Virus record (IMG/VR): IMGVR_UViG_3300042515_001753 | Span: 62,001-126,000 of that record | DNA: 64,000 nucleotides | Reading direction: 5' to 3' (one strand) | The notes under the pieces: model-generated | What the model saw: only the letters and a program-made list of their open reading frames with translations | The model's database searches: none | Told to the model about the DNA's origin: nothing | In this document: positions 3,470 to 53,500 of the stretch, in pieces | Layout of the letters: each line of letters begins with the position of its first letter | Numbering within the stretch: position 1 is the first letter of the stretch | Position numbers and translations under genes: made by a program

Positions 3470-4361
3470 CCAATCCCTCCTTCTTCAATCTATCATAATT
3501 ATAACACCCATCAAAACTAAATTGTATCTTAGGACCTTTAGTATAATTGAACAACAAAAGTTCCTTTCGTTGTTTTTGGTCTCTCATATACTCACCAACC
3601 GAACGCATAGTATAAGTTAAATCAAACTCTGTGGCATTCCAGTTCTTGAATCTATCCTTTATAAGTTGGTCTGAATTATAACTCACCAATTGGTCCATAT
3701 CATTAGCATCGCAATCAGCAGCAAACTTATCGTGATCAAATCCTTTGTGCATTGATCCTTTGCGCCCATAGAGATTATCCTTAATATCATAAGGAGGGTC
3801 AAGATACATAAACGCACCTTTGTTTCCATCCATCAAATAATCATATGAATAATTAGTTATACGCCATTTCTCAATCAGTTTACAGTATTCTGGCAGTTTT
3901 TCAATTCCACGAAGACTGAAGTTGGCATTGGATGCTTGAGGAGAGAAAGAAGAACTTTCTGTGAGACCACTGAAAGAACACTTATTAATAATATAAAAAT
4001 CAACCGCACGATCAAGATTTGAACGTCCTTCTTCGTGTAATTTATCCTTACAATAAAGAAATAGATCCCTTGCTAATTCTGGGTTATTGTTTGCTAATTT
4101 TATTCCTTTAAGATTATCTTTCAGATCTGTTCCAAACATCTGAAGTTGCTGCCAGAAGTTTACCAGAGGTTCATAAAGGTCATTCACCCAAATATCCAAG
4201 AGTGGATACTTCTTTGTGATGTGAATTGCAACACTCCCACCGCCAATAAATGGTTCCCGAAACTCATCATAATTTCGTAGGTCTGGAAAGAAAGGGTCCA
4301 TCTTGACACAAGCACGGGACTTGCCGCCAGGGTATCTTAAAGGGGTCTTAAGAGACTTCAT
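3459..4361 (-). CDS. dam: DNA adenine methyltransferase (D12/Dam class)
   Basis: Likely start MKSLKTPLRYPGGKS; EPFIGGGSV (SAM binding) and YLDPPY (catalytic motif IV). Confidence 0.92.
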   Translation of the reverse strand: MKSLKTPLRYPGGKSRACVKMDPFFPDLRNYDEFREPFIGGGSVAIHITKKYPLLDIWVNDLYEPLVNFWQQLQMFGTDLKDNLKGIKLANNNPELARDLFLYCKDKLHEEGRSNLDRAVDFYIINKCSFSGLTESSSFSPQASNANFSLRGIEKLPEYCKLIEKWRITNYSYDYLMDGNKGAFMYLDPPYDIKDNLYGRKGSMHKGFDHDKFAADCDANDMDQLVSYNSDQLIKDRFKNWNATEFDLTYTMRSVGEYMRDQKQRKELLLFNYTKGPKIQFSFDGCYNYDRLKKEGLVDA

Positions 4362-37184: not shown

Positions 37185-37900
37185 TAATAGGTTCCTCCAT
37201 CTATAACACTAGACCAGGTTGGTATTCCTGAATTGTCAGTTGTAAGTATATAGTTAGTTTCTGATATTGCCGATGAAGTAGTACCGGTAGAAACTAACCG
37301 ATCATTTAAATCAAAATATGCAACACCATAAGGTTGTCCTATCGGATAATAAATTGATTGTCCTACTGTAAGGATTCCAGTAATATTTGCATTACGAGCA
37401 GTAAATTCATCAAATACTAAATCATCACTGATATAAAGATCGCCATCAATATAAACATTATTTTTAAAGGTTGTAACACCTACAAAAGTAGAGACACCGG
37501 AAACATAAAATTGGGATGCATTAACAATACCAAGTGTACTAATTCCGGTTGAATTAATATTAGTTAAAGTAGAGTTTACACTATTGAGTGTAATAATACT
37601 ACCAATTCCAGTTACGTTAATGTTACGAGCAGTAAATTCATCAAAGAAAATGTCATCATTAACATATAAATCACCATCAATATAAACATTATTTTTAAAA
37701 GTTGTAACACCTATAAATGTAGATAATCCACTAACGTTAAGAGATGTAACTGATGCTATGCCACCAATTACATTTTCTGCAGTAAAGGCAAGTCCACCAG
37801 CAGCTCCAGAAACGCTAGATACAACTTTAACTGTATTTTGCTGACCTACCCTAGATTTTATAGTATTTTGTTGTCCAACTTTTACTCTTATATCGGACAT
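37184..37900 (-). CDS. hypothetical fibre-like virion protein with an internal duplication
   Basis: Two copies of STF.GVTTFKNNVYIDGDLY..DD..FDEFTARN; C-terminal DGGTY. Confidence 0.75.
   Translation of the reverse strand: MSDIRVKVGQQNTIKSRVGQQNTVKVVSSVSGAAGGLAFTAENVIGGIASVTSLNVSGLSTFIGVTTFKNNVYIDGDLYVNDDIFFDEFTARNINVTGIGSIITLNSVNSTLTNINSTGISTLGIVNASQFYVSGVSTFVGVTTFKNNVYIDGDLYISDDLVFDEFTARNANITGILTVGQSIYYPIGQPYGVAYFDLNDRLVSTGTTSSAISETNYILTTDNSGIPTWSSVIDGGTY
37373..37730. repeat. intragenic direct repeat, about 127 nt, period 231 nt
   Basis: Copies at about 37373-37499 and 37604-37730; TTACGAGCAG anchors at 37392 and 37623. Confidence 0.85.
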
Positions 37901-38244
37901 TACCTAGTTACTCCTTCTCTTACGAGAACCATTCCTTCAATGACGCGATTTTTGATTTGAGAAACATCAGTAATTACAACATCATAAACATATCTTCCGG
38001 GTTTTATAGATAATGTTTCTTCGGACGATAATGATATTAATATTTTACCACTAGTAGATGGTTCTTCAATTGAAGATGTAAAAGTTATGGCTGTAGAACT
38101 ACCAGCCCACTTTCTCATCTGAGCATCAACTTCATAATTGTTCAAATTTAGTGGAGAATTGTTATCAGATCCCTCTAAAGTAAAGGACTGACTAAAATCA
38201 GAACCAGAATTGATGACTAAGTTATTAACGTATACTGCTGCCAT
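37900..38244 (-). CDS. small Ig-like virion protein (BppU N-terminal-like)
   Basis: NLVINSGSDFSQSFTL...LNLNNYEVDAQMRK...GRYVYDVVI...RVIEGMVLVREGVT; TATAAATA at 38268-38275. Confidence 0.7.
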   Translation of the reverse strand: MAAVYVNNLVINSGSDFSQSFTLEGSDNNSPLNLNNYEVDAQMRKWAGSSTAITFTSSIEEPSTSGKILISLSSEETLSIKPGRYVYDVVITDVSQIKNRVIEGMVLVREGVTR

Positions 38245-38270
38245 CTATCTTTTTTAGCTCTACAATTTAT

Positions 38271-38441
38271 TTATATCTTACTCATAGTTGCTAAAACTTC
38301 TTGCTGCCTTAAGTATAATTTGCAGTAAAGTTTTGAAAAATTTTTTAATTCCTCAACACTTAATTCGTCTATAAATCTAGAATGTTTTTCATATTCAAAC
38401 AATTTATTGATAGTTTTCAATTCAATATCATTCGGATCCAT
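38271..38441 (-). CDS. nblA: NblA-like phycobilisome degradation adaptor (56 aa)
   Basis: Not in the ORF track. MDPNDIELKTINKLFEYEKHSRFIDELSVEELKNFSKLYCKLYLRQQEVLATMSKI; keeps NblA spacing F-x11-(M/L)S-x4-K(D/N)F. Confidence 0.6.
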   Translation of the reverse strand: MDPNDIELKTINKLFEYEKHSRFIDELSVEELKNFSKLYCKLYLRQQEVLATMSKI

Positions 38442-38628
38442 TTAGCAATTCTCTCAATAAAGATTTAATTTCGCCAATATCTTGTTTAATCATATCCAAT
38501 TCTTTTTTTTGAGATTCTCTATTATTAACTATATTGAGATATTGATTATATGCGACAGAATCGCAATTAACAATAGCTCCGCTATTTTCATCCCTATAAA
38601 GATTTGTATGCCCCTTTACTCTAATCAT
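38428..38628 (-). CDS. conserved small hypothetical protein with C-terminal coiled coil
   Basis: MIRVKGHTNLYRDENSGAIVNCD...ELDMIKQDIGEIKSLLREL. Confidence 0.75.
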   Translation of the reverse strand: MIRVKGHTNLYRDENSGAIVNCDSVAYNQYLNIVNNRESQKKELDMIKQDIGEIKSLLRELLNGSE

Positions 38629-41600
38629 CTTACAGCAATCGTCCTAAGTTCTTTAATTCTTGGTGGATATGCCTGATTAGTTCCGGACATTACAATTTTA
38701 ATTACATATCCATTAAACAATCCAAGATTGTTTGCGGTAAATTCATATTCTTTGAATTGATTATCCAAACTAGAACTTACGAAAGAATCAGGTTTTCCGT
38801 TATTTAGAGAAGAATCAACTACCGAAAGTCCGGATGCCGTAGATGTAAGATTATCATAACCAGGAAATAGTTCAAATGATTGTTCAACTTCAGAAGAATC
38901 TGGTCTAGCCAAACTGTACAGAACTCTGAAATCAGCAGATTCGTGACGATATGCAGATAAAATAACTTTAAGAGAGGTTGCTGGTTGTACCAGATTTACT
39001 GCTCTTGAAACATACACTACTGCGTGTGGATCATCTAGTATGGAATTAGATCTTCCATCTAATGCATAATCGGAAACTGGACTATTTAGACGATTGGAAA
39101 TAAACTCGGTAAATGCAGTATCTAAAAATATTATGGGTGATATATTAGAATCTGTTGTACTTAGAGTTATTCCTGTTGTAAATGATTTATTTCTAGGTAA
39201 ATTATTAAGATATTCCGTTTCATTCTCTTTAGAACATACGAGTCTCACAGTTTTTAGTGTATTTAATGCATTCAACTGAACTGGTTCAAATCCATTATCC
39301 AAGAATGAAGTCTCATTTCCACTTACACTTGTTCCAGAAACAGATCTAATCACAGCGGAAACTGATGTCGAAGATCCTGGAGTAATGATGTCATATGTTG
39401 GCACCACGGAACTATAAAGAATATTTTCAGTTGCAAGAACTTTAGAACCTCCTAAGTTTGCTTCGGAGGTAAATTGCAGTTGGGGCATTCCTGCAGGAGA
39501 TCCATCACCACTTCTATCTACTCCATTTGCAGTTCTATCAATTTCCAAATAATAACCATCCAATCCGATATCTAAATCACTAATATCGTGAGTTGTATTA
39601 ATTCTGCGTAATGAAACTCCATTTAATTCATACTTATACATTAAACTATTGATACCATGATCAATTGAAATAGTAGAATCAATACCCCTGGTAATAGTAC
39701 CCAAGAATCCACTACCAATAGACTCATACTTAATTATTTCGTTTCCAATTTTTGCATATCCAGGATTAGATCCACTTACGGAAACTCCTTCAAAAGTTGC
39801 AAAGTTTGAAGTATCTCCAATTGCAACAGAAATTGTTGTTGATGTTGAGGTTAGAGATGAAGTAATTGTAACTGGTGCAGTACTAGATTCTGTATCATAA
39901 ACTCTAAGTTTATTTGTATTTCCATACATTCCGTGATCGAAATGTTCTACTCTTACATAATTTCCAGAATATTGATTAGTTGAAGGTGCAAAATTTCTAA
40001 TTACAGTACTTGCAAGAGAAACTATTGTATTGGAATTATCATAGTAATTTAATCCACCACCAACTGTAAAAGTATCCCCTTGAATATTTTCCAAGTATAG
40101 TGTATCCACTCCAGTAATTGATGAAATTGTAATTCTTGCATCACGTCCACGCACTGAAGTTCCAGTACCTACTGTAGAAGTTACAATACCAACAACATCT
40201 CCTACCGCATATCCATTTCCTAAATTTGCAGTTGTTATTCCAGTAATTGTTCCATTAGTGGCAGTAATATTCAACACAAGTCCAGAACCATTTCCAGTAA
40301 TATTATAAGTACTTACATTAGAATCCGTAACATAATTACTTCCACCCGTAGTTAATCCTACTGTTACCACTGCACTCCCTGTTCCACTTACATATCCATA
40401 AACATAATTCTTTGTTCCATCTACAATTTTTCTACCATTACTTAAATTTGAGATTACTGATGAATCTGTTGTTGTGGTAATTCCTAATGAACCAGTTCTG
40501 GGTAATGTTGTTAATGGATTATTTTCTAATGTCTGAACATATCCATTACTTTCATCCAATGTTGGATTATAGAAAAATGCTGTTCCTGGTTGATTTTCAA
40601 TAAATTGTGCCTTATAAAGTTTAAATTTAAGGTCCTGATATTGGTTTGCTGTCCATATGGATCCATTTTGGGATTTAAACAGACTTCCCATCGCAAACTG
40701 TTTTGAATAAGTGACGGCACTAACATCTGGAAGATCTTTTGTATTAACAGTTTTTTCTCCCATGACCGCAGTCCACATCTCATACTGATCACTATTTTCT
40801 GAAATAATTACAACAGCATATTCTCTCCCAGGTGGAAGATAAATTGGCTCATCAAAAGTAACTTTAGTGGCAATAGAAGCATCTGAAGAAACATTTACTT
40901 CACTTGGTCTTAATGTAACCGAATTTCCAATAACAATCCTTGTGGGTGTTCCCAGTTCTACAGTTCTTATTTCAACTTTTACCGTAGCATTTCCACTATC
41001 TTTTTTGGCAAAGAATAAATCAACGGCAGTTAAAAAGGCACCATTAGAATCATCAGTTGCCAATCCTTCTCTAGAAGAATCTGGAGCCTCTATATTTCCA
41101 CCAACAACAAAAGATTGTGCAAGAGGGTCTACAAATCTCTGGATAGTTGTTCTAGTATGAGTGTTTATCGTTGTTACTGAAGTTGTTGTATTTGTTGTAA
41201 GATTAGTGGATGTTTTTGTTGTTAGATTTTTAGTAGTTGCCGTAACAGTATTTTCCCACTGTTCAAGCGTACCATCAGAATTGAAGTTTGTTTCGGCAAC
41301 TGAAGTATCTGAACTTCCTGGAAGACCTGGATCGTTTGTTGAACTTGAACTCAACTTAAATGTTTTAGTTCCAGTAGAAATTCTTACAGTTGGAGTTGGG
41401 ATTGTATTTGGATTTCTTAAATAAAAGGTTCCAATCAAGTCTCCAAAATTATCAGAAATAAGTCTTAAATCACCAACAGTTGCCACAGCACCACTAGTCT
41501 GACCAACCAATTGCATACCCTTAAGTAAATATCCAGAATACTTTCCTTGAGCCTCTTCTGATAATGAAACAGTATCAATATTCAAAATTTTTGATGATTG

Positions 41601-44600
41601 ACTATATCCAGATGCTATGGATTCGGTTCTAATATATGGGTTAATTGTATATGTAGTGGATGGTGCATTATATGGACCATACTTATGATTTGGTGTTGCA
41701 ACTCTAAATGAAATTAAATTATTACCACCAAATGTTCCCACAACGGTTTCCCCAACCACAAATGCTTTAGATGGGTTTGATATTTCAATTAATTTTGGAA
41801 TAAAATCAACTCCACTATTTCCATCAAGAAACTGATAAAATTGTGTAGATGGTTTGATATTAGATGCAGAAAATTGAATATTTCTGGATCTCATAAATGA
41901 TTCCTTAGATGAAGATATTAATACATTTCTTATCGTTGTATCAGTATTGCTTGTGGTATCAAAATTTTCAGTTGTTGAAATAGTAGAAGTAGTATTAGTG
42001 GCAGTTGAGGACGTTACAGTATCAGTTGAGGACGTTACAGTTCTATTACCTCCTCCCCTTATAGTTGGCAAATTAACAGTTTTACTCGTTTGAGTATTAA
42101 TCGGTGTTAGAGTAACAAAAACATCACTTGTTAAATTGTTAGTAAGCGTTCTACTAGAATTTAATGTTATGTCAATATTTTTATCTGGAAGTTGAACTGT
42201 TCTCACCCAATTGTCAATTTCCGGACTTAACTTAATATCACCACTATAAACAATTACATTAAACGGATTTACATTTTCAACTGTTGTTGCAAATGCTTGT
42301 TCTATCCATCCAGTAGATTCATACTTTAAAGTTACTGCTTTTCCTGTTTTTACAACATTTGGATCTAGTAACTTAAAATTTTCCGAAAAATCTAAATTTT
42401 CATCAGTAACTGCAGATTCGGGTGCAATTTGTGATTTAAGTGAATTTCTACTAGTAATCGGTGTTATTTCATTTGTGGATGTATTAACTCTAATAGAAGA
42501 TAATCCCCTATTAATGAAGGAATAATTTTTAAAATCATCTACAAAAAATCCACTCTTAAATCTATTATTGCCATCAGCATCTTGAATTTGTAAAGTCTGC
42601 GTATTTACTTCAAGTAAAGACAATGAAGTAACTCTCTCTAAGTTTTCTACCCTATCTTCAATTAAACCAATATCTCTCATTGTATATCTTCTATTATCCT
42701 TTAATGTCACTACTGCATTTGCTGGATTATAAAGATATGGTGGTAATTTTATGGTTGCAATTTCCATTACCGCATCATTTTTATCTGGCGCCTTAGGGGT
42801 ATTTGAAGATATTCCTTTTTCTAGAATAAAGTTTTTATTCTTATCAAGATATAATTTATCAATTCTTGCTAAGTAATAATCGTAACCAAGTAGTGAACTT
42901 TCATTTGGTGATAAAATGCGTGTGGGTTCTAAAGTTCTTGATGAGAAATCAAATGGGGAAGAACTAGCTGAGGTAAAAATTGAAACTCTTGGTCTAAAAT
43001 CTAAAGTATCAGAAGATCTTACAGATCTTGGTCCAATGAAAGGAACATCATGTGTAAATCGGTCTTTGTCATAACTTAACACAGTAAATACATCGCCACT
43101 ATCATTAGAAGGAATCGAATAATAGTCAAATACAACTAAAAGTTGTTTTGATGGCTCTGTAGTGTTCTTATTCCTAACAATTTTAGAATAGTCGTAATAT
43201 TGATCTTTCTGCCCTTTATCAAGTCTATATGAATTGGTAATATCTTTATACTTTCCTGGAGTTATTGCTTCAATTTCTGTAGTTATATTTGATTCTTCGA
43301 ATGTAACAGTTTCCAAATCTTCAAATCTTTCTGAATTTAAATATACTACACTAAGAATATTGGAAGATGGACTTGAAACAACTCTTGCGATAGATTTACT
43401 ATTATTTCCTAAAATATTTTCACCAATAATAGCATTTGTCGATACATTAGCACTAGCGCCAAATTGTATCTGATCTAAGGTGGGTGCTGAAGAATCAAAT
43501 GACTCATAAACTGAAATAATTTTTACCACATCTGGGTAATTTAATGATATTTCCTCATCTTGAACTCTTAGTCCATAAAATTGATTGTATGTAAGACCAT
43601 CCCCAATTGAAGAACTAATACCAGTTCCTGATTGTGGATACTTCGATCTTGCTACAGTTAAAGTTTTACTTTTATTATATGTTTTTACTTTGCTTTGAAT
43701 TCCATTTTTAACTAATGTGACATTTACGACAACATTTGACTGAGAAGCGGACAATCCACTGATAGTTACCGTATTTCCACTCAAAACAAATTGATCCGAA
43801 GTTACAGATCCGATACTGCCATCATTATAGTGTACTGAGTATCTTTCTTCATCAAATGTTGTAAAAAATGCACTAGTAATACCAGCAACTGCTGACAAGT
43901 TAAATGTTAATACTCCATTAGAATCAGTAGTTTCTCCTGTTATTTGTTCAGAAATTGTTAGTAATGAATCTGAAAGATTTACTGAAGAAACATTAGGATC
44001 TGGTAACTGTGCATATAGGAATCCAGAATTCTCATTTCTTATTACTGGTGCTCCAATGAAAATATTATTATAAGTTCCGTTTGTAACTGAACCAGAATAT
44101 ATTCCAGAAACTCCAGGAGTTGTAGTAATAGTTAATGAAGTACCTTCAGGAGAAACTGCTGTTACTCTGTTAAATGACTCATCTCCTGTGGTAGTTTGAT
44201 ACCTAATAATTGAATTAACTTTTATGCCAGTGAAAAATTTTCCAGGACTTACTACAGTATTTCCTCCGCTGATAGTTACTTGAGTCACTCCATTTGGAAG
44301 TCTAAATCTTTCAAGAAAACAATCGGCGGTAAAATCTACTGGAAGACCAGATACTGCAGTTGTTTGTTTTACAGATTTAATATCTTCGGTTGAATATGCA
44401 GTTACGGTTTTGATAGTTCTTGGAAAATCAAGACCATTGATAATCAATTGTTCTCCAACTGAAAATGTTCCGGAAGTTTGTCTTAGGCTGATTGTATCAG
44501 ATGCTCCACCAGCAGAAACTGCATATCCACTAGCGCCGCTACTTTTTCCCCTTACAAATGATGTTGCTGGTAATTCTGTACTTGATATTGTGGAATTTAG

Positions 44601-45983
44601 AACAAGAGTTGTATAAGTTTGAATATCATAAAGATACAGATCCCAATTAGTGATATCATTACTATAGGCAGCATCAGTTAAACTAAAACTATATACTCGT
44701 GCATTACCAATTATGGATCCGGTAGAATTGAGTTGATTATATAAATCTATTGCGTATTTTGGTTTTGGTGTTCCAGATACATTATTTACTCCTATAATAT
44801 TTCCCATCTCAAAGGGAATATTTACATTTGGAATAGATTTAGTATCTCTCGGTTTATCAACATCAATAATAGTTGTTGAAATTTTTTCTATATCATATCC
44901 CCTTACATAAGCCTTTCCTGGGGATATTTTTAAACACATCAAGTCTTCTGATGGTGTGTTTTTTTGTTCAGTAATTTCTGTATTAAAAAACAAACCGTTA
45001 TTACCCAATCTATCATTTAAAGAATTATTTACGGACAGATTAAATGGCTCTACAGTATAATCACCAGATTCATCATAAGTTCTTTCTGCCATATAATCTT
45101 TAATTATATCATATTGACTTTTTTGCTCAATTATTTTAATTTTTCCATTTTCAACTCTCAAAAGTTCAACAAAATCAGTATCATTAATATCTGATATTAA
45201 TTTCTTTGTTAGAGTTAAATCAATCTTAAATCTATCTGCTCCAGGTGCTGCGTAGTTTGTAAATCCTTTAGAGGGGTCGTATAATGAACTGTCATCCCCA
45301 GCATTGAGAATTAATTCGTCAATTTTTAGACCAACCCTATATGAAGGTGTATTTGTATAATTATCTAAAATTATGGTTTGTTTAGATACATTAACAAAAT
45401 AACCTCTAATAAAATAAATTCCATCACCAATAGATGCTGAAGAACCTACAGATGTTGCGTTCAATAGTATTAATGATGCAAATGGAGTTCCTGCATTAAT
45501 AGTAGTGTTGCCATAAGTTATATTTTCTTCTGCAACTAATGATTCTCCATCTTCAAAAGGATTAAACTGAAAATTATTATCAGAATCCAAATATTTTACA
45601 TATATTGTTAAATCCTCTACATTTTCTCCATCAGGGAGCGCGACAAATTGAATTATTGCTGTTGTTCCTGATATTTGCCCTGTTATTTTTTTGCCAATAA
45701 AATTATTAATATAGATAGAAATATCAACCCCAAAATTAGTTGGATTAAGTTTTACGGAATTGAAATTTCCATCATAGGCAATATTTCCAGGAATAACTAC
45801 CGATCCCTCTTTAAATATATGACTTCCAAAAGACTTTACCTGATCCTGCAAAATAGATTGAAGAGTTGTTAGCTCTCTTGCCTGTACTGGATATCCTGGT
45901 TTAAACAAGACTTTATAAAAATTCTTTTCAGAATCAAAGTCATCATAATATGGATTGATGTTTAAATCTGTTTTCTGTGTCAT
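38625..45983 (-). CDS. large virion structural protein (DUF4815 / VrlC-like), 2452 aa
   Basis: NINPYYDDFD..KNFYKVLFKPGYPVQARELTTLQSILQ, YMAERTYDESGDY, RFKSGFFVDDF, DPLAQSF. Confidence 0.9.
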   Translation of the reverse strand: MTQKTDLNINPYYDDFDSEKNFYKVLFKPGYPVQARELTTLQSILQDQVKSFGSHIFKEGSVVIPGNIAYDGNFNSVKLNPTNFGVDISIYINNFIGKKITGQISGTTAIIQFVALPDGENVEDLTIYVKYLDSDNNFQFNPFEDGESLVAEENITYGNTTINAGTPFASLILLNATSVGSSASIGDGIYFIRGYFVNVSKQTIILDNYTNTPSYRVGLKIDELILNAGDDSSLYDPSKGFTNYAAPGADRFKIDLTLTKKLISDINDTDFVELLRVENGKIKIIEQKSQYDIIKDYMAERTYDESGDYTVEPFNLSVNNSLNDRLGNNGLFFNTEITEQKNTPSEDLMCLKISPGKAYVRGYDIEKISTTIIDVDKPRDTKSIPNVNIPFEMGNIIGVNNVSGTPKPKYAIDLYNQLNSTGSIIGNARVYSFSLTDAAYSNDITNWDLYLYDIQTYTTLVLNSTISSTELPATSFVRGKSSGASGYAVSAGGASDTISLRQTSGTFSVGEQLIINGLDFPRTIKTVTAYSTEDIKSVKQTTAVSGLPVDFTADCFLERFRLPNGVTQVTISGGNTVVSPGKFFTGIKVNSIIRYQTTTGDESFNRVTAVSPEGTSLTITTTPGVSGIYSGSVTNGTYNNIFIGAPVIRNENSGFLYAQLPDPNVSSVNLSDSLLTISEQITGETTDSNGVLTFNLSAVAGITSAFFTTFDEERYSVHYNDGSIGSVTSDQFVLSGNTVTISGLSASQSNVVVNVTLVKNGIQSKVKTYNKSKTLTVARSKYPQSGTGISSSIGDGLTYNQFYGLRVQDEEISLNYPDVVKIISVYESFDSSAPTLDQIQFGASANVSTNAIIGENILGNNSKSIARVVSSPSSNILSVVYLNSERFEDLETVTFEESNITTEIEAITPGKYKDITNSYRLDKGQKDQYYDYSKIVRNKNTTEPSKQLLVVFDYYSIPSNDSGDVFTVLSYDKDRFTHDVPFIGPRSVRSSDTLDFRPRVSIFTSASSSPFDFSSRTLEPTRILSPNESSLLGYDYYLARIDKLYLDKNKNFILEKGISSNTPKAPDKNDAVMEIATIKLPPYLYNPANAVVTLKDNRRYTMRDIGLIEDRVENLERVTSLSLLEVNTQTLQIQDADGNNRFKSGFFVDDFKNYSFINRGLSSIRVNTSTNEITPITSRNSLKSQIAPESAVTDENLDFSENFKLLDPNVVKTGKAVTLKYESTGWIEQAFATTVENVNPFNVIVYSGDIKLSPEIDNWVRTVQLPDKNIDITLNSSRTLTNNLTSDVFVTLTPINTQTSKTVNLPTIRGGGNRTVTSSTDTVTSSTATNTTSTISTTENFDTTSNTDTTIRNVLISSSKESFMRSRNIQFSASNIKPSTQFYQFLDGNSGVDFIPKLIEISNPSKAFVVGETVVGTFGGNNLISFRVATPNHKYGPYNAPSTTYTINPYIRTESIASGYSQSSKILNIDTVSLSEEAQGKYSGYLLKGMQLVGQTSGAVATVGDLRLISDNFGDLIGTFYLRNPNTIPTPTVRISTGTKTFKLSSSSTNDPGLPGSSDTSVAETNFNSDGTLEQWENTVTATTKNLTTKTSTNLTTNTTTSVTTINTHTRTTIQRFVDPLAQSFVVGGNIEAPDSSREGLATDDSNGAFLTAVDLFFAKKDSGNATVKVEIRTVELGTPTRIVIGNSVTLRPSEVNVSSDASIATKVTFDEPIYLPPGREYAVVIISENSDQYEMWTAVMGEKTVNTKDLPDVSAVTYSKQFAMGSLFKSQNGSIWTANQYQDLKFKLYKAQFIENQPGTAFFYNPTLDESNGYVQTLENNPLTTLPRTGSLGITTTTDSSVISNLSNGRKIVDGTKNYVYGYVSGTGSAVVTVGLTTGGSNYVTDSNVSTYNITGNGSGLVLNITATNGTITGITTANLGNGYAVGDVVGIVTSTVGTGTSVRGRDARITISSITGVDTLYLENIQGDTFTVGGGLNYYDNSNTIVSLASTVIRNFAPSTNQYSGNYVRVEHFDHGMYGNTNKLRVYDTESSTAPVTITSSLTSTSTTISVAIGDTSNFATFEGVSVSGSNPGYAKIGNEIIKYESIGSGFLGTITRGIDSTISIDHGINSLMYKYELNGVSLRRINTTHDISDLDIGLDGYYLEIDRTANGVDRSGDGSPAGMPQLQFTSEANLGGSKVLATENILYSSVVPTYDIITPGSSTSVSAVIRSVSGTSVSGNETSFLDNGFEPVQLNALNTLKTVRLVCSKENETEYLNNLPRNKSFTTGITLSTTDSNISPIIFLDTAFTEFISNRLNSPVSDYALDGRSNSILDDPHAVVYVSRAVNLVQPATSLKVILSAYRHESADFRVLYSLARPDSSEVEQSFELFPGYDNLTSTASGLSVVDSSLNNGKPDSFVSSSLDNQFKEYEFTANNLGLFNGYVIKIVMSGTNQAYPPRIKELRTIAVR

Positions 45984-45991
45984 TTTTTTTT

Positions 45992-47536
45992 TTAGAATTC
46001 CAGGATAATTTTAATGTCTTCTTTTTGCCTAATGTCTCTTGTTACCAGGGGTCTATTATCAATATAAATTATATCTCCTGTCTTTTTATTTATCTCAGGA
46101 TTTGCAAGACCTGCTGTAAAAGTTACTCCTAAATCTATAACTTTATTTCCAACAGTAACTTTATTTGTTGGGGTGAGAGAACCAAAACTAGTATCAATAG
46201 ATCCTGCAAATGGACTGATAGGATTTGCCGAAGATTCAAAATTATAAACTTTAGAGTTATCATTTCGGTCAGTTTGATCTAAACTATTTCCAAAAAATAA
46301 AGATCTATCTTGAAAATATTTTAATACCTTAGTTTCACTATCATATGAAGCCACATAACCTCTTGCAGTTCCATTGGTTACAGTTTGAGTCATTTCTTCT
46401 CCGATAACTGGAGTTCCAGTAAAACCTGAAGTTAATTTAATCGCCCCTAGAGATGAATATTGATTTTCCGTAAAGATAACAGTATCAGATGAAAAAGTAG
46501 TTGGATTTTTTATAATTCCAACTTGAGCAAATTTGGTATCAGTTGGAAAATCTTTTGTTGAGTCATCAAATCTGGCATATACTAATACTTTATCTGTTCC
46601 TAATTCAGTATAAATGTCATATCCATGCCCGTTTGATGGGGGAATGATTGGTATTAGTTTTGCTGGATTTGGAAGACTTCCACCAGGACGAAGACTTCCC
46701 AAGTCAACGATTCCCCAAGTATATCCAAATCCACCTGCAACAATTTGAGTAGATACAATAGATCCACTACTATTGACTGTTATAGAAACTCTACCACCAG
46801 ATCCATCACCAAGAATATCAACAACACCAGAACTATATCCACTTCCTCCATTTTGAATATATACTTTTTTGATTTGATTTGGGTTTGTATCTCCAGAATC
46901 CCCATTTTCTCTTACACTTATAATCTGAGAATCTGTTGATGTTGTCCAATCATTTGGAACAACAACATATTCTGTTGAATCAAACTTTACAATATCACTT
47001 GGAGAGACTGAAAAGAGATATTTCCAAATATAACCATCTCCACTTATTCCAGCTGCAGATGGTTCTAAATCTGTAAATGTAGGTTCATCTTGAGATTTAT
47101 TTCCCTTTAAATTTGTACCAGAAGAACCATTATCTATACAAATATAAACTCTAAAATCACTATTAATTACATAATAATTTGAGTCATATAACCTACTTGA
47201 GTTTGAATTTGGTGTTGGATTCTGAATGCTATAATCGTGTCTATACATCTCATAAGATGTATTGGAAGTCCAAGTAACCTTTCTTATGAGTCTTCTAATA
47301 TTGCTAGACGTAACTTTTTTACCAAATAAAGATGTATCTCTATAGTGACTTAAATATTCTAAATTATCAGTTGGATTTGGAGTATCATCATTCCAAGTAG
47401 TAGTTCTTCCAAATCCAACTTGTGCAGGATTATCTAAACCCAAAAAAACATAATAAGAATTACTACTATCTACAACAGAGTCTATAAAATTGCTCGCATT
47501 TAATATTCTAAATTGATCTGTTACGATTGCTGCCAT
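45992..47536 (-). CDS. gp8: baseplate wedge subunit
   Basis: AIVTDQFRILNA, YRVYICIDNG, DGYIWKYLF, GDIIYIDNR...RQKEDIKIILEF; TATAAATA at 47555-47562. Confidence 0.92.
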   Translation of the reverse strand: MAAIVTDQFRILNASNFIDSVVDSSNSYYVFLGLDNPAQVGFGRTTTWNDDTPNPTDNLEYLSHYRDTSLFGKKVTSSNIRRLIRKVTWTSNTSYEMYRHDYSIQNPTPNSNSSRLYDSNYYVINSDFRVYICIDNGSSGTNLKGNKSQDEPTFTDLEPSAAGISGDGYIWKYLFSVSPSDIVKFDSTEYVVVPNDWTTSTDSQIISVRENGDSGDTNPNQIKKVYIQNGGSGYSSGVVDILGDGSGGRVSITVNSSGSIVSTQIVAGGFGYTWGIVDLGSLRPGGSLPNPAKLIPIIPPSNGHGYDIYTELGTDKVLVYARFDDSTKDFPTDTKFAQVGIIKNPTTFSSDTVIFTENQYSSLGAIKLTSGFTGTPVIGEEMTQTVTNGTARGYVASYDSETKVLKYFQDRSLFFGNSLDQTDRNDNSKVYNFESSANPISPFAGSIDTSFGSLTPTNKVTVGNKVIDLGVTFTAGLANPEINKKTGDIIYIDNRPLVTRDIRQKEDIKIILEF

Positions 47537-47557
47537 ATTAATATTTTTTTTAAGTAT

Positions 47558-50500
47558 TTATAAGAGTTTTGGAAGTGCTCCTGTTTGTCTAATTCCAATT
47601 CCCCTTCTTTGAATCGTTGCAAAGGTTGTTAATCCAACATCCACAGTATTTCCGGTTACTCCTATTGAAATTGGAGAACCTGACCTACTAAATCCAGACA
47701 TTCTACCCCAAGAATATTTACCAACAGGATTTGATATACTTCCAGAAGAAGAGAGTCCAGTCGTAGATGTGGTTGATAATATATTACAAGTAATGATTCC
47801 AACAGTACCACTAGAGGAGAACTGATGAATGTAGTAAATATTATCTATAAAAGTTGTTCCAATTCCAACCACCGCAGAATTAGAAGTATTAATAGAAGTG
47901 ACTCCCTTCCCAACTCTTGTATCAAAGATATAAATTGGATATCCAGTAGATAGACCTGTAAATGATGAAGAATTTAAATGGAATTTAAGTGCCAGTGGAT
48001 TACCTCCACTACCTGTTGTGGTTGTAATTCCTGTAATAATTCCAGAGAATCCGTTAATTAAAGTAATATTTGAAATTAATTCTACTGCTCCACTTGCATT
48101 AGTGGAAATTCCATTGACAATTAAAGAACTAAAAGGTTCTGGACTAATAGTATTATCATACTCAAAGAATTCTGCATTATCTACAAATATTTGAGTATCT
48201 GTGGTTGAAAAATCTTTAATAATCTTAGCGGTTGGATAAATTAAAGACTCAATAGAATCTCTAGTTTTATAAACGTCTTCTCCGTTAATTTTCCTATCAA
48301 CTTTTTGCTTAATCCAACTTAATGGTTTATTATTTTCAGAGTCAACACCTTGGTTTGAATATAAATTAGTTTCAAACTTATCGGAGAATGATAAATCAAA
48401 TACTATTCTCTTGTCTTGTGTTATTGTTCCTGGAATTGAATTATTTTTAAGAACTTGTACAGTATCACCTCTTTTTAAAGTTTCATTAATTGAATCATTT
48501 ACAATAACATCAACACCATCAGTTCCTTTATAGAAGAAAATTGCAACATTATCCTCTGGTCTTGGAGCAGTTGTAAATATGAAACTAGTTCCGCCATCAA
48601 ATTGATATGCAACTCCAGGATCTTGAATTACTCCATTTATAACAATTAATAGTGCATTTGAAAGATTTACTTGAGAACCTTCTGAAGATTCAAAACTCAA
48701 TAATTCATTATTATAATATAGTGGGAATCTTGTTCTGACTCCATCCTGATAATTTTTTATAGAATCTATATAATCAAACTCACCAAACTGCCAAGCAGCA
48801 AAAGAATCTGAAAATGTATCAACCACAGTCAATTGGAACTCTGATAATGGAGATGCCAATCCTTTAGCAGTCACCAATCCAACTGGTTTAAATACATCTC
48901 CTCTTCGGAACGAGTAACCCTGTCTTGAAATACTAAATTTAGAAACTTCAAAGTATGTTGATCCTATTCCAGTTGTAGAACTTGCTCCAACTTCGACATT
49001 AAGTAAAAGACCTATTCCAGTATTTGTTGTTGCTCCAACTCCTAATCTAGATACTCCGATTACATTTAAATTTTCATATGAAGGTTCTGATACAAATACT
49101 TGAGGATTCGTATACCCCGTACCTCCTCCAACAACGGCGAATGATAAGACGCCGCCCGCTCCAACTGTTGCCGATATCGTCGCTGCTGCTCCTGTGTGTC
49201 CATTTTGATATACTGAAACTCCTACGGAAACAATACCATTGTATCCAGAACCAAGATTATCGGTAGTTCCTAGTCCAACAGATACTATACTACCCCCTGC
49301 CCCAACTACGGCAGTTACTGCTGCTCCCACAAGAGGTGCATATCCAAGACCAGTAGAAGAACCCAAGGAAACAATTATTCCTCCTCTAGGGGTTTGGTTT
49401 TGATTTACATCAAACTCCGAAGTAATAATATTAAGATTATCTGGATCTCTAATTCCAGAGAATACCACACTAGATATTCCTGAAACAGTATTTTCAATAA
49501 TACTAAAATTATTTTCTGGGTTATTGAGAGTTGTTGGAGTTTGGAAAACACCATTTATGAATAAAATTCCATTTCCTCCACTGGTTCCCAACCCTACAGT
49601 GTTTGCCCCACCGACAGTTAATGTAAAAGTTCTACCAATACCTGTAAATTGACTTGAAATATCGTCATATAGTTGATTTGATGTATAATCATTTCTCAAG
49701 AAAACTCTTCCGGTAAAATCGGAAGTTTCAAAAGTCAAATTACTAGAATCTTTAATTATTTGAGGATTTCCTCTTGGAGATTCTGCAAAGAAAATATCAC
49801 CATCAACAATATTATAAGATCCTTTATAAATTCTTACTGAAGTAGAATCTGTGTGAGTCGATGCCGATGACCCAACAAATCCTCTAGTGACTTCGACTAA
49901 ATTGATATTTCCACTATTTGTAATTGGTCCAACATTGGTTGTTCCCAATCCAACATTAATTATTCCCATATATTCATTATCAATTTTTAGAATATCTTTT
50001 GGTATAATTGTAGATATTCCACTCAAGGCAAATATTGAAGAACCTGCACTTATTTGTCCACCATTATTAAGCAAAGTGTATGATATTGGAGTAAATAATA
50101 ATGGATATTGAACTATATTATCAATAGTAATTAGTGCTTTTTCAAGTTTTTTATCCATTTCTAGTTGATGTGCATTACCGCTACCATATGAAGTAAATGT
50201 AACTGCAATTCCAGAAATAGCATTAGACTTAGTTGTTGCTAATTTAAATGTACTATCTGACAATTTGATGACATATACCTCTGAAGGTAACAATGTCGGA
50301 CCAGCACCAATTTCCATTGCACTAGCACCAACTCCAATAAATGTTGATTTTGGTGTATAGATAAGTTCTTCTAAGTTGCTGAAAAAATGGTTTTGTATAG
50401 TAAATATTCCCGTTGATGGATCTAAAATTGTTGAATTTGTAGGATTAAATCTTTTTGCAAAAATTTCAATTCCATTGGATTTTAAATTAAAATTATTTCT

Positions 50501-53500
50501 ATTAATTCTATTTCCATTAATTGCATTATACTGCTCAATATCAATCGATTCTTCTATTGTTCCATAACTTAAACTTGGAGCAGTATTTTGTGTATCTAAA
50601 GTTGTATACAAGCACTGATTAAATGCTAAAATATTAACCTCAGAAGTTACTGATGGTTCTGGATAAAATTTTAGTATGAAATTACTACCAGAATATTCTC
50701 CACCAAAAGTTCCAATTCCGTTTGTACTTCCGACAGAAAGAAAAGGTGATTGTTGAACATAAATGTTAGTTTCATCCTGCACTAACATTATTTGATGAAG
50801 AGCACTTGTTGACCCAACACTTACTTCTACTAAAGATTTGACTGCATTAAAATTAGTTTTATTCAGTGATATTACAGTTGATGCTGAAGAAACTGTAGAT
50901 GAATAAGTTGATTGATATATAGCACTCCTTTCATTTCCTGGTATTTGACCTGGAGATATGAATCTATATGTATCTGCACCCACAGATGTTGTTCCAAACC
51001 CAACAATCTTTGATCTAACATTTACTGAATTTGGGGAATTGTTAATATAGTTTAATGATAAAACTCCAGAAGAAATGCTTGCACCAAATGAGCCTATGTT
51101 ATTTCCAGAATAATAATTGCTTAAAAATTCAGAATCAAAATAATATTCTGATATATAAGTGTCTGTCCCATCGTGGTTCAAATATACTTCAACAAAGTTC
51201 ATTTGATTTGTTACTGAATCAATAATCTGAATATTTGAATATAATGAAGAAAATTTATTTGCCTGTACGGATATAATTGAAGTTTGTATTCCAGTTGTCG
51301 CAGTTCTATTTGAACCAGTTAAATTGATAAATCCAACAGAAGTTGTTCCAATTCCTGGCAAAACAGAATTAAAATTGCTATTAATTAATTTAATATCATA
51401 ATCAATATTGAATGGATCTTTTGGAACAAATCTTAAGTAATTACTATCATCTACATCATCTGTAATTAATATAAATTCTCCTATAGGTTCTCCAGAAATA
51501 TGCGTAAGTCCAACTCCAGCGTTGACTAGTGTTGATTTTTCAGCCAAAAATGAATTACTTCCATCATTCAGTAAAACTAATTCCGTTAATTGAATTTCGG
51601 TATTGTCCAGACTGGAAACCCTGACCAATATATTATCATAAGATACTCCAGTATTTAATTCTAGTAAATTAATAAATTCACTTGGATTTCCATCAGAGTC
51701 GGAAAATTGACGATTTATGTCATCTATTTTTAAAACTACATTACTTCTACACTCAATATAATCAGTTAATTTTTTATTTTTTAATTTTAAAAACTTTGAA
51801 GAAGTTCCAACTAAATCAATATCTTTTACTAAATCAAAATCATAAATTGTATCTACTCTATTTTCCTCTATTATGTCATAAAGTATACTTATATTATTAT
51901 TGGAAGTTACAACATCAAAGTTTGCAGTTGATGTAATTCCAGTATCTGCAAAATTCTTCAATCCACTTGTATGAACTAAACTATTAACTGGTGTTCTTAA
52001 TTCTTGATATGTAATTGGACTCTTTATAGTATAGGAAAGATTTTGATAATAATCATTATCAGCAACAACTTGATTATCTTGATCCAATTTACCAATATCA
52101 TTAGACCATCCAATATTTTTTTCAATTGAGTAGTCAACCTTAAATCTACCAATACCAGATTCAATTTTATCTATTGTCGCTACATTTCCAGATTCTTTTC
52201 CTACAATAATTTCCCCAACAGACAAATCATAAGTTCCAGATACTTTAATAAATGAATTTTCATAAGAGGAAATTTCTAAATCTCTCTCAGTATTATTTGA
52301 GATTAGTTTTTCTCCAATAATAAACTCAGATTGAATTTGTGTAACATTAAATATGGGATAATCTGTGCTTTTTATAATATTTCCAACAGAATCCTGAATT
52401 GTTTTTGCTATCCCCGTATTTGTGGTTAATCCAGAAATGTTAATTGTTACTGAATCAAGAGTTCCAGCATTACTATAGTTATTAATCGTAAAGAATTGAT
52501 ATCCATAATCTTCAGAATTAAATCCAGTCCCTTCAGTGCTAAATTTTTGAATTCCTTCTACAAATACTTTATCTCCACTAGAAAATGGGAAGGCGGAAAA
52601 TCCTAAAGTTGGTGTTGTTATGAAGCAAGTAAAAATTCCACTTGAAGAAGATTGAACTTGTTGAATACTAATTCCATTAGTATTATTGGTGGTGAATAAT
52701 TGTACCGTTGTTTCTGGAAGACCCTTTGGTTGTTGTATGATATTTACAGAATCAATAGAATTTCCGGACAGTTTTGCTTCTAATATTCCACTATCAATTT
52801 GTTCACCAGTGCTTGAATCCACAATTATTACTGATGGCGCATCAGTATATCCTTTTCCACCATCTGTAACTGTAATAATACCAATTGTATTTGAATTTTT
52901 AATTGTAATTAGTGGAGATATTAATGCAGTTGGTTGTAAAGTTTTATCTGATGAATATTGAAATCCTTCATTAATGATTCTTACTTCTTTTGCATTACCT
53001 ATGGACGTTGATTTTGGAGTAATGTAGGCATCTTTTCCATCGATAGAATTAGATCCTACAAATGTGGGAAGTTTTTTATATCCAGAACTACCAGAAATAA
53101 TATTAATTTTATTAATAGAACCTTTTGCTGATAATGATGTTGTGGTGTATTGCAATTTATCACACTCATTTTGAGTATATGATAATTTTTCCGGTTTTTC
53201 TGATAAAGAAATGCTAAATGTTGTTGACCCTACGCCAGAAATTGTATAATTGGAATTGTATATACTATTCACAAATAATATTTCAGAATAATTACTCACT
53301 TCTTTGTCAGAAGTACTAATATATCCGGATTTTTCTAAATTGTAGTATAATTTAGTTGGTAGATTTTCACTATAATTGATAGTTGAAGAAGCATTAGTAG
53401 AAACTCCAATGGTTCCTATACCAGATAATGTAAATAAGTCGGATGATGGAGTTGAAATAAACTCATTATTATATTGATTATCATAATAAAGTTTAAATTT

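What the first reader, a model, noticed from the sequence alone, without database searches (positions are those of the whole stretch)
38271..38441. Hidden NblA-like gene inside the late structural operon
Seen: a 56-aa ORF below the ORF-track cutoff that overlaps the upstream gene by 14 nt. It aligns by eye to NblA (IELSLEQQF-SIRSFATQVQN-MS-HDQAKDF-LVKLYEQM versus IELKTINKLF-EYEKHSRFIDE-LS-VEELKNF-SKLYCKLY). Established: NblA targets phycobilisomes to Clp proteolysis, and some cyanophages encode active NblA. Inference: late-expressed antenna degradation to supply amino acids for virion synthesis and reduce photodamage; this also implies a phycobilisome-bearing host.
Basis: partly seen in the sequence, partly recalled or inferred. 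Interest (0 to 1): 0.7.

Follow-up and report, generated by a model that had tools for sequence, protein, structure and literature searches.

The report
Divergent NblA-like gene in a cyanophage
A real, conserved 56-codon gene in the tail/baseplate gene block of a freshwater T4-like cyanophage belongs to an already published family of divergent NblA-like proteins, which probably help the phage dismantle the host's light-harvesting antenna, so it is a new member of a known kind.

Summary
The ORF exists exactly as described: 38271-38441, minus strand, 56 aa, with a 14-nt overlap with the upstream 66-aa virion-protein gene. It is a real gene. It has hundreds of homologues, and their differences follow the codon-position pattern of a protein under purifying selection.

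It does not match Pfam NblA (PF04485), and neither do 64 diverse relatives. Three other lines link it to NblA:
- It is clearly homologous to a multi-copy small-protein family of picocyanobacteria (hhalign 98.7%, E 2e-16).
- Its AlphaFold model (pLDDT 94.6, helix-loop-helix) has NblA crystal structures at ranks 1, 2 and 6 of 48,161 PDB chains.

The syntenic orthologue in Synechococcus phage S-SRM01 (71% identity) was already listed as an NblA homologue by HHpred (96.9%) in a 2022 paper.

Function, late timing and dimerisation are inferred, not shown. The homodimer test gave no verdict. A phycobilisome-bearing host is likely on other evidence, but nblA alone does not imply one.

Verdict: a new member of a known kind, of modest interest.

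The parts
38271..38441 (-). nblA-like ORF, 56 aa (MDPNDIELKTINKLFEYEKHSRFIDELSVEELKNFSKLYCKLYLRQQEVLATMSKI). Predicted helix 11-25, loop, helix 29-53.
   Evidence: ORF. PHROG 27081. Homologues. AF2 pLDDT 94.6. NblA chains 1ojh_A, 2q8v_A and 3cs5_A at ranks 1, 2 and 6 of 48,161. hhalign.
38428..38441 (-). 14-nt overlap (ATGGATCCGAATGA) between the start of the nblA-like ORF and the end of the upstream gene. This arrangement suggests translational coupling. A purine-rich GAGAGAA lies 8-14 nt upstream of the ATG.
   Evidence: In the tblastn coordinates the upstream-gene match runs into the start of the nblA-like match by about 8-11 nt in nearly all relatives.
38428..38628 (-). Upstream 66-aa gene, a small virion structural protein (PHROG 473).
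   Evidence: E 1.1e-20. Directly upstream of the nblA-like gene in 79 of 81 related IMG/VR, S-SRM01, S-SCSM1 and S-TIM5 loci with enough flank. Annotated 'virion structural protein' in S-SRM01, S-SM2 and Bellamy.
38625..45983 (-). Giant 2452-aa gene of the same transcription block (PHROG 358; annotated 'VriC' in S-SRM01).
45992..47536 (-). Baseplate wedge subunit gene (PHROG 438), the first gene after the nearest upstream late-promoter motif.
   Evidence: E 1e-157.
47555..47562 (-). TATAAATA, a T4-type late-promoter motif 19 nt upstream of the baseplate wedge ATG. It is the nearest such motif upstream of the nblA-like ORF and the inferred start of its late transcription unit.
   Evidence: all 10 copies in the window lie on the coding strand, and 7 lie 19-38 nt upstream of ATG starts listed. 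That it functions as a promoter is inferred from T4 biology.
38268..38275 (-). TATAAATA motif overlapping the stop codon of the nblA-like ORF, 24 nt upstream of the next gene's ATG (38244). This is the inferred late promoter of the downstream LtfC-like gene, so the nblA-like ORF is the last cistron of its unit.
37900..38244 (-). Downstream 114-aa gene, an LtfC-like beta-sandwich (PHROG 3304, 'L-shaped tail fiber protein assembly').
   Evidence: Present directly downstream in 62 of 82 related loci.

Best explanation
The ORF encodes a divergent member of the NblA superfamily. It is of the type found in multiple copies in picocyanobacteria (Synechococcus, Cyanobium, some Prochlorococcus) and in a set of T4-like cyanophages.

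Shown here:
- It is a real, constrained gene.
- It is homologous to chromosomal small proteins of picocyanobacteria.
- It is predicted to fold as a short-helix, loop, long-helix hairpin that best matches NblA crystal structures.
- Its profile aligns to canonical NblA in one register over helix 1, the loop and helix 2.
- In this phage lineage it sits as the last, overlapping cistron of a baseplate gene block bounded by T4-type late-promoter motifs.

Inferred:
- Like cellular NblA and the tested viral NblAs (Ma-LMM01, PaV-LD, the marine MAG G1 protein, S-TIP37), it forms a dimer that binds phycobiliproteins and hands them to the host ClpC-ClpP protease.
- This strips the antenna of the infected cell, a freshwater Synechococcus/Cyanobium-type host. 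It frees amino acids for virion protein synthesis and lowers light harvesting.
- Here it is probably made together with the virion proteins, that is, late.
For: Real gene:
- (see the observation check).

Host homologues:
- The family profile hits 147 of 201 picocyanobacterial genomes. Larger genomes carry several copies, genomes of 1.3-1.8 Mb carry one, and many of the smallest carry none. This is the distribution described for picocyanobacterial nblA in PMC12695635.
- Pairwise BLASTP to a chromosomal 58-aa Synechococcus protein gives 44% identity, E 2e-8.
- hhalign of the phage family against the host family gives 98.7%, E 2e-16.

Link to canonical NblA:
- hhalign against 50 PF04485-positive NblAs scores 22.8, P 5e-4. 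Of 150 column-shuffled controls, none reached it (mean 10.3, sd 2.3, max 16.2); the reversed alignment scored 11.2. The host family against canonical NblA scored 25.1.

Structure:
- AF2 pLDDT is 94.6, with helices 11-25 and 29-53.
- An exhaustive VIA-align search ranks 1ojh_A (Z 6.5, rmsd 1.4 A, 50 of 52 residues), 2q8v_A (Z 6.2) and 3cs5_A (Z 5.0) at 1, 2 and 6 of 48,161 chains.
- The host homologue's model independently ranks 2q8v_A and 1ojh_A at 2 and 3.
- In the ESM Atlas shape search, the only similarly sized match that carries a family name is an NblA/ycf18 cluster (TM 0.71/0.64). The language-model neighbours that carry a Pfam family carry PF04485.

Literature:
- The S-SRM01 orthologue QPX48163.1 (71% identical, same synteny) has HHpred best hit NblA of T. 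vulcanus at 96.9%. S-SCSM1 ORF237 (55% identical) has NblA of Nostoc 7120 at 95.5%.
- Viral NblA speeds infection and directs phycobilisome degradation in S-TIP37.

Mobility, as expected of an auxiliary gene:
- In S-TIM5 it lies among tRNAs, ferredoxin and glutaredoxin genes. In S-SCSM1 it lies next to a helicase gene.
Against: - There is no Pfam PF04485 match for this protein or for any of the other 64 family members, even at E<=10.
- HMMER profile-to-sequence scores against canonical NblAs are at decoy level.
- HMMER profiles of the family against all PDB sequences do not find NblA.
- Foldseek finds nothing in the PDB or in Swiss-Prot models.
- The hhalign 'probability' against canonical NblA in my small alignments is only 8-31%.
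- VIA Z-scores of 5-6.5 are in the range the tool warns can reflect a common helical arrangement.
- No member of this cyanomyovirus/picocyanobacterial clade has been tested experimentally as far as I found. Of two marine viral NblA-like proteins tested by Nadel et al., one failed to complement.
- The C-terminal tail is not conserved in this family. From my memory of Bienert et al. 2006, that tail carries the phycobilisome-binding residues in Anabaena NblA.
- A position in a late structural block differs from the replication-phase expression of S-TIP37 nblA.
Confidence: 0.68

Rival explanations
1. It has the NblA fold but a changed role. It could be an adaptor for proteins other than phycobiliproteins. 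Or it could pair with the host's own NblA paralogues, either activating them or blocking them, and so tune antenna turnover rather than simply degrade the antenna.
For: - The hosts carry several homologous copies with which a heterodimer is conceivable.
- Nadel et al. proposed a host partner for the non-complementing viral G1b protein.
- S-TIP37 NblA also directs degradation of non-phycobilisome proteins, and nblA occurs in Prochlorococcus and its phages, which lack phycobilisomes.
- The C-terminal tail is variable in this family.
- The homodimer prediction stayed just under the mark, which is no evidence either way.
Against: - Nothing in the sequence points to a different target.
- All 23 cultured phages carrying a homologue were isolated on Synechococcus, which has phycobilisomes.
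- The simplest reading of homology is conserved function.
Confidence: 0.17
2. It is a small structural or assembly factor of the baseplate/tail-fibre module, and the resemblance to NblA is just that of a generic helical hairpin.
For: - Its place between a small virion protein and an LtfC-like tail-fibre assembly protein is kept in 79 of 81 (upstream) and 62 of 82 (downstream) related loci.
- It overlaps the upstream structural gene.
- No Pfam or HMMER link to NblA exists.
- Z-scores are below 8.
Against: - Homologues are chromosomal in 147 of 201 picocyanobacterial genomes, in a housekeeping context. That makes no sense for a virion assembly factor.
- The gene sits outside the structural module in S-TIM5 and S-SCSM1.
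- The S-SCSM1 paper does not name it among the virion-associated proteins it discusses.
- NblA chains, rather than any phage protein, top two independent structure searches.
Confidence: 0.1
3. It is a chance open frame with no product.
For: It is short, lies in an AT-rich genome and overlaps another gene.
Against: - Hundreds of homologues exist and the codon-position pattern is that of a coding sequence.
- In some relatives it is more conserved than its neighbours, for example L019: 78% against 55% and 48%.
Confidence: 0.01

Closest known systems
Synechococcus phage S-SRM01 gp198 (YP_010670173.1 / QPX48163.1)
   Same: It is 71% identical over the full length. The gene order is identical: giant 'VriC' gene, 66-aa virion protein gene with overlap, this gene, LtfC-like gene, baseplate wedge gene. 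It comes from a freshwater host. It is listed as an NblA homologue by HHpred (96.9%) in Table S4 of PMC9602691.
   Different: It is 58 rather than 56 aa. GenBank annotates it only as 'hypothetical protein'. The surrounding 3-kb locus is only about 73% identical in DNA, so the window comes from a different, uncultured lake phage.
S-SCSM1 ORF237 and S-SCSM2R 'NblA' (annotated phycobilisome degradation protein)
   Same: Same family: 55% and 43% identity, tblastn E 1e-8 and 5e-7. The assignment rests on the same kind of remote-homology evidence (HHpred 95.5%).
   Different: In S-SCSM1 the gene stands alone, with a 112-nt spacer after a virion protein gene and before a helicase gene. It does not overlap a structural gene. 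The hosts are marine.
Picocyanobacterial small proteins described as divergent NblAs (Nadel et al. 2019; PMC12695635)
   Same: Clear homology (hhalign 98.7%, E 2e-16; BLASTP 44% identity, E 2e-8). Same length and the same predicted hairpin. The shared motif is roughly L-x-L-x(3)-F-x-x-E-x-x-S-R-x-I-D ... D-x-E-E-L-R/K ... A-K.
   Different: They are cellular, chromosomal and multi-copy, and public databases name them only 'hypothetical protein'. The phage family has its own conserved K-L-Y-L-K-Q-Q-E in helix 2. I infer that these are the same proteins the papers call NblA from their distribution and sequence pattern; I could not check this by accession.
Canonical NblA (Pfam PF04485; Nostoc PCC 7120 1OJH, T. 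vulcanus 2Q8V, S. elongatus 3CS5)
   Same: Similar size, and a helix-loop-helix with a short first and a long second helix (rmsd 1.3-1.4 A to 1OJH and 3CS5, 3.0 A to 2Q8V). The conserved L and F of helix 1 (LSLEQQF) align with the family's nearly invariant L8 and F15. The loop S/D and the following E-E/Q also align.
   Different: No Pfam or HMMER match. Only 10-14% identity in the structural alignments. The conserved Q residues of LSLEQQF and the C-terminal tail are not kept.
T7-like cyanophage NblA (S-TIP37), the experimentally characterised marine viral NblA
   Same: A small viral auxiliary gene, often overlapping its upstream gene. Its proposed role, antenna degradation that feeds virion synthesis, has been demonstrated there.
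   Different: It is a different branch of the superfamily, closer to canonical NblA. [quoted passage not shown] Here the gene lies inside the morphogenesis block.
Freshwater cyanophage NblA (Ma-LMM01, MaMV-DC, PaV-LD)
   Same: A phage-borne nblA in phages of freshwater cyanobacteria.
   Different: Those are recent host acquisitions that match PF04485 outright (all hits carry PF04485) and lie next to nrdA/nrdB. This one is ancient and divergent and does not match the Pfam model.

Membership tests
Canonical NblA / Ycf18 (Pfam PF04485) | Match to the Pfam NblA model at or above its gathering score (25 bits) | tested here: not met
   No hit at E<=10 for the protein or for any of the 65 family members. 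No PF04485 match anywhere in the 146-kb virus record. The model also finds nothing in Synechococcus WH7803 at E<=1, so it does not cover the picocyanobacterial branch.
Canonical NblA / Ycf18 (Pfam PF04485) | Profile-profile similarity to bona fide NblA over the whole domain, in one register | tested here: inconclusive
   hhalign against 50 PF04485-positive NblAs scores 22.8, P 5e-4, probability 31%. None of 150 column shuffles reaches it (max 16.2), and the reversed alignment scores 11.2. The result is significant against the controls but below the usual 90% bar. Published HHpred with large alignments gives 96.9% for the orthologue.
Canonical NblA / Ycf18 (Pfam PF04485) | Protein of about 55-65 residues folding as a helix-loop-helix with a shorter N-terminal and a longer C-terminal helix | tested here: met
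   56 aa. AF2 pLDDT 94.6 with helices 11-25 and 29-53. 1ojh_A, 2q8v_A and 3cs5_A rank 1, 2 and 6 of 48,161 chains, each covering nearly the whole chain. An Atlas NblA cluster gives TM 0.71.
Canonical NblA / Ycf18 (Pfam PF04485) | Functional form is a dimer | tested here: inconclusive
   Complex prediction with two copies scored 0.39 against a mark of 0.42, with controls at 0.00. The tool's verdict is 'no answer'.
Canonical NblA / Ycf18 (Pfam PF04485) | Binds phycobiliproteins and ClpC and triggers phycobilisome degradation | not testable with these tools
   This needs expression, complementation and pull-down experiments. No data exist for any member of this clade in the papers read.
Canonical NblA / Ycf18 (Pfam PF04485) | Conserved helix-1 motif L-S-L-E-Q-Q-F and a conserved C-terminal L-x-K region | tested here: inconclusive
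   L8 and F15, both nearly invariant in the family, align with the L and F of the motif. The Q residues are not kept. In this protein M53 and K55 align with the L and K of the C-terminal region, but that tail is not conserved across the family. The importance of those residues is recalled from the literature and was not tested.
Cyanomyovirus / picocyanobacterial NblA-like family (PHROG 27081; S-SCSM1 ORF237 type) | Significant sequence similarity to named members | tested here: met
   PHROG 27081 at E 3.5e-18. S-SRM01 71%, S-SCSM1 55%, S-TIM5 50%, S-SCSM2R 43%. Host family hhalign 98.7%. BLASTP E 2e-8.
Cyanomyovirus / picocyanobacterial NblA-like family (PHROG 27081; S-SCSM1 ORF237 type) | Occurs in cyanophages and picocyanobacteria | tested here: met
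   All 23 phage records with a match are Synechococcus phages. 147 of 201 picocyanobacterial genomes match. The window's phage carries psbA and comes from lake water.
Virion structural / assembly protein of the T4-like baseplate module | Confined to phage structural modules, with no cellular homologues | tested here: not met
   Chromosomal homologues lie in a housekeeping context. The gene lies outside the structural module in S-TIM5 and S-SCSM1.

The most novel reading that the evidence does not exclude
In this large clade of freshwater and marine T4-like cyanophages, the NblA-like gene has been fixed as the last, translationally coupled cistron of a late baseplate operon. It might therefore be made only with the virion proteins. 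It might even be packaged and delivered with the particle, so that antenna dismantling in the next cell starts before any phage gene is expressed. Alternatively, it might act by pairing with the host's own NblA paralogues rather than on its own. Either would be a mode of action not described for viral NblA.
Probability: 0.1. Interest if true: 0.6.

Novelty: new member of a known kind. Interest (0 to 1): 0.3.

Why it matters
Viral NblA has recently been shown to speed up infection and to cut light harvesting by marine picocyanobacteria, but only for T7-like phages. This locus adds an uncultured lake phage to the much less studied T4-like branch. It also shows two further things:
- This branch is common in environmental viral contigs. 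448 IMG/VR stretches matched, and the 80 kept (at least 64% identical) almost all have the gene at the same spot in the structural module.
- Its closest cellular relatives are the multi-copy, unannotated small proteins of picocyanobacteria.

If the protein does degrade phycobilisomes, the impact of viral NblA on photosynthesis extends to freshwater picocyanobacteria and to myoviruses. The late-module position raises a testable question about when antenna degradation is useful to the phage. As a discovery it is incremental, because the family and its NblA assignment are already in print.

Tried and rejected
- **Pfam.** hmmscan of the protein and of 65 family members gave no NblA hit.
- **HMMER against the PDB.** Profiles of the family found only chance hits, such as a bacteriophytochrome kinase and AcrIIA15, at E>0.4.
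- **Foldseek.** Searches of the PDB and of Swiss-Prot models gave nothing below E 2.8, as expected for a 56-residue hairpin.
- **HMMER against 50 canonical NblAs with 2000 shuffled decoys.** The phage profile was indistinguishable from decoys. The host and merged profiles were only slightly above them.
- **Homodimer prediction.** Complex prediction scored 0.39, under the 0.42 mark, so no verdict. I do not use it for or against dimerisation.
- **A sigma-70-like site inside the upstream gene.** This site (38573-38545, TTGTTA-17-TATAAT) could be a private promoter. It is not conserved beyond what the coding sequence explains, and promoter-like sites are no more frequent than in shuffles. Rejected.
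- **RNA evidence.** No RNA run holds this phage. Two marine metatranscriptomes hold relatives. One 1.7-kb contig of a relative about 89% identical spans the LtfC-like gene, the nblA-like gene, the 66-aa gene and the end of the giant gene. The tool warns that this does not show transcription or a single transcript, so I do not count it.
- **Genome-contig scans.** A scan with Ma-LMM01 NblA found nothing. I reached cyanobacterial genomes through the phage's psbA instead.
- **Other antenna genes.** CpeT (PF06206) was not found in the phage record, which is 68% complete.
- **Host gene neighbourhood.** One homologue lies among housekeeping genes with no phycobilisome genes nearby, and the adjacent small ORFs are not paralogues.
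- **Database names of host homologues.** All are 'hypothetical protein'.
- **Supplements of PMC12695635.** These are not held, so I could not match accessions.
- **Fusion proteins.** Pfam scans of natural fusions containing the domain were uninformative.

Full report
**1. The observation**

The upstream ORF 38428..38628 (66 aa) ends 14 nt inside it. The shared letters are ATGGATCCGAATGA.

Every ORF of 100 aa or more that looks like a gene in the window lies on the minus strand. The neighbours are T4-like morphogenesis genes, in order:
- a baseplate wedge subunit (45992..47536)
- a 2452-aa protein of PHROG 358 (38625..45983)
- the 66-aa 'virion structural protein' (PHROG 473)
- the ORF in question
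- an LtfC-like protein (37900..38244)
- a baseplate-wedge-like protein, head-tail adaptor, head closure protein and tail sheath stabiliser

The window is part of a 146-kb IMG/VR virus record estimated to be 68% complete. Lake-water metagenomes of 2020 and 2024 hold it. The nearest isolate is the freshwater Synechococcus phage S-SRM01, at about 73% DNA identity over this locus.

**2. It is a gene, not a chance frame**

- The protein matches PHROG 27081 at E 3.5e-18.
- It matches 320 proteins in the 5.8-billion-protein collection, 448 stretches in IMG/VR and 116 clusters at 50% identity.
- It matches 23 cultured phage records, all from phages isolated on Synechococcus.
- Against 83 homologous loci, nucleotide differences fall 1123/424/1839 on codon positions 1/2/3.
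- In several relatives the protein is better conserved than its neighbours. In L019 it is 78% identical, against 55% for the 66-aa protein and 48% for the giant protein's C-terminus.

**3. Is it NblA? The negative tests**

Pfam PF04485 gives no hit at E<=10 for the protein or for any of 65 diverse family members. Nothing in the whole virus record matches it.
- HMMER profiles of the family do not find the NblA chains in the PDB.
- Foldseek finds nothing.
- Against 50 canonical NblAs and 2000 shuffled decoys, the phage profile scores no better than the decoys.

The Pfam model is also blind to the host lineage. It finds nothing in Synechococcus WH7803 at E<=1, although it finds NblA in 40 of 121 sampled genomes across the cyanobacterial phylum. 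This agrees with Nadel et al., who report that picocyanobacterial and marine phage NblAs score poorly against PF04485 and needed a purpose-built profile.

**4. Is it NblA? The positive tests**

*(a) Host homologues.*
- A profile of 65 phage-family members hits 147 of 201 genomes of the WH7803 family. Larger genomes have several copies, genomes of 1.3-1.8 Mb have one, and many of the smallest have none. That is the pattern PMC12695635 describes for picocyanobacterial nblA.
- These are chromosomal genes in a housekeeping context, named only 'hypothetical protein'.
- The window protein is 44% identical to one of them (BLASTP E 2e-8).
- The two families align at hhalign probability 98.7%, E 2e-16.

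*(b) Canonical NblA.*
- I collected 50 PF04485-positive NblAs from diverse cyanobacteria.
- hhalign of the phage family against them scores 22.8 (P 5e-4, probability 31%). The host family scores 25.1.
- None of 150 column-shuffled versions of the NblA alignment reaches these scores (mean 10.3, sd 2.3, max 16.2 for the phage family). The reversed alignment scores 11.2.

*(c) Structure.*
- AlphaFold2 with the family alignment gives pLDDT 94.6, with helix 11-25, a three-residue loop and helix 29-53.
- Aligned to every one of 48,161 PDB representatives, the top two are NblA of Nostoc 7120 (1ojh_A: Z 6.5, rmsd 1.4 A, 50 of 52 residues) and of T. vulcanus (2q8v_A: Z 6.2). NblA of S. elongatus (3cs5_A: Z 5.0) is sixth.
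- The Z values alone are in the range the tool calls unremarkable for helical proteins. What carries weight is that all three NblA entries come out at the top.
- A separate model of a host homologue (pLDDT 83.8) again puts 2q8v_A and 1ojh_A at ranks 2 and 3.
- In the ESM Atlas shape search, the only similarly sized match that carries a family name is an NblA/ycf18 cluster. The language-model neighbours that carry a Pfam family carry PF04485.

*(d) Literature.*
- Table S4 of PMC9602691 lists the S-SRM01 protein QPX48163.1 with HHpred best hit NblA of T. vulcanus, 96.9%. One search shows this is the syntenic orthologue gp198.
- S-SCSM1 ORF237 (55% identical to the window protein) is annotated 'phycobilisome degradation protein' on HHpred 95.5%. 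S-SCSM2R carries the annotation 'NblA'.
- According to PMC9602691, Nadel et al. (2019) predicted an nblA gene in S-TIM5, and the S-SCSM1 gene and its myovirus homologues cluster with it. S-TIM5 gp189 is 50% identical to the window protein.

**5. What I conclude about identity**

Membership of the cyanomyovirus/picocyanobacterial NblA-like family is firm. That this family is a divergent branch of the NblA superfamily is well supported by profile-profile and structural evidence and by published HHpred. It is not supported by profile-to-sequence methods. I put homology to NblA at about 0.85.

**6. How it probably works**

*Shown:* the fold prediction, the homology and the gene's position.

*Inferred from cellular NblA and from the tested viral NblAs:*
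- A dimer binds phycobiliproteins and recruits ClpC-ClpP.
- The antenna is degraded, which frees amino acids for virion protein synthesis and lowers light harvesting.

The homodimer test gave no verdict. No member of this clade has been tested, and one of two marine viral NblA-like proteins tested earlier did not complement. I put the functional claim at about 0.6-0.7.

**7. Expression**

- TATAAATA, the T4 late-promoter consensus, occurs 10 times in the window. All 10 are on the coding strand, and 7 lie 19-38 nt upstream of an ATG. The total count is not above chance; the strand and position pattern is what counts.
- One copy overlaps the stop codon of the nblA-like ORF and lies 24 nt before the next gene's start. 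The nearest copy upstream is at 47555, before the baseplate wedge gene.
- The ORF is therefore most simply the last cistron of a 9.3-kb late unit, translationally coupled to the 66-aa gene. This is inference; there are no transcript data for this phage.
- A sigma-70-like site inside the upstream gene is not conserved beyond coding constraint.
- Late expression would differ from S-TIP37, whose nblA comes on with the DNA-replication genes.

**8. Synteny and mobility**

- Of the related loci with enough flank, 79 of 81 have the 66-aa gene directly upstream and 62 of 82 have the LtfC-like gene downstream. The loci counted are 80 IMG/VR loci at 64% identity or more, plus S-SRM01, S-SCSM1 and S-TIM5.
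- S-SRM01, S-SM2 and Bellamy share the arrangement.
- In S-TIM5 the gene lies among tRNAs and small auxiliary genes. In S-SCSM1 it lies between a virion protein gene and a helicase gene.
- A gene that has cellular homologues and moves between modules behaves like an auxiliary metabolic gene, not like a virion part.

**9. Host**

nblA does not by itself imply phycobilisomes, because it occurs in Prochlorococcus phages. Three other lines point to a phycobilisome-bearing picocyanobacterium here:
- the lake-water origin
- a psbA fragment 97-99% identical to those of freshwater, brackish and marine Synechococcus/Cyanobium
- the host of S-SRM01

**10. Novelty and score**

The family, its presence in T4-like cyanophages including the freshwater S-SRM01, and its NblA assignment were published in 2019-2022. 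The biological importance of viral NblA was shown in 2025. This locus is a new member of a known kind.

What this analysis adds:
- a control-calibrated profile comparison
- two independent exhaustive structure searches
- the breadth of the host family
- the conserved late-module position

Interest is 0.3.

Noticed in passing
L085 (G000:C1:133184-136843, outside the window): 901-991, 1326-1563, 2138-2364, 2439-2691: The phage's psbA gene is split. Rfam finds three group I introns (108, 98 and 58 bits) and a PhotoRC-II RNA motif just upstream. The exon ORFs end and restart around the introns, and a 206-aa ORF follows at 2900-3520, which I did not identify. Three introns in one phage psbA seems unusual.
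   Followed up: partly
window 2100, 3262, 12502, 21933, 23315, 28095, 34922, 38268, 47555, 61445 (all minus strand): All ten TATAAATA motifs lie on the coding strand, and seven sit 19-38 nt upstream of ATG starts of long ORFs. They look like T4-type late promoters that divide the structural region into units.
   Followed up: partly
window 47558-59131 and 38625-45983, minus strand: Two giant structural-module ORFs of 3857 and 2452 aa. The second matches PHROG 358 end to end and is annotated 'virulence-associated VriC protein' in S-SRM01. I did not examine the first.
   Followed up: no
P0127, P0131, P0176, P0177, P0179 (metagenomic relatives): Natural fusions of the NblA-like domain. P0127 is a tandem of two copies in one 134-aa chain, which would fit a dimeric working form. 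Others carry an extra domain of about 75-85 residues, before or after it, with no Pfam match. The Atlas shape search also hit a 137-aa 'T4 protein Y07B domain' cluster at TM 0.93 over the hairpin.
   Followed up: partly
L019, L021, L023 and similar loci: In more distant relatives the NblA-like protein stays 74-78% identical to the window's, while the flanking 66-aa protein and the giant protein's C-terminus drop to 48-62%. The small gene is under tighter constraint than its structural neighbours.
   Followed up: no
window 37931-39651: A 1720-nt contig in a marine metatranscriptome run (X22), about 89% identical, spans the LtfC-like gene, the nblA-like gene, the 66-aa gene and the 3' end of the giant gene. 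It has an 11-nt deletion in the spacer at 38264. It may reflect transcription of a relative's locus or carried-over DNA.
   Followed up: partly
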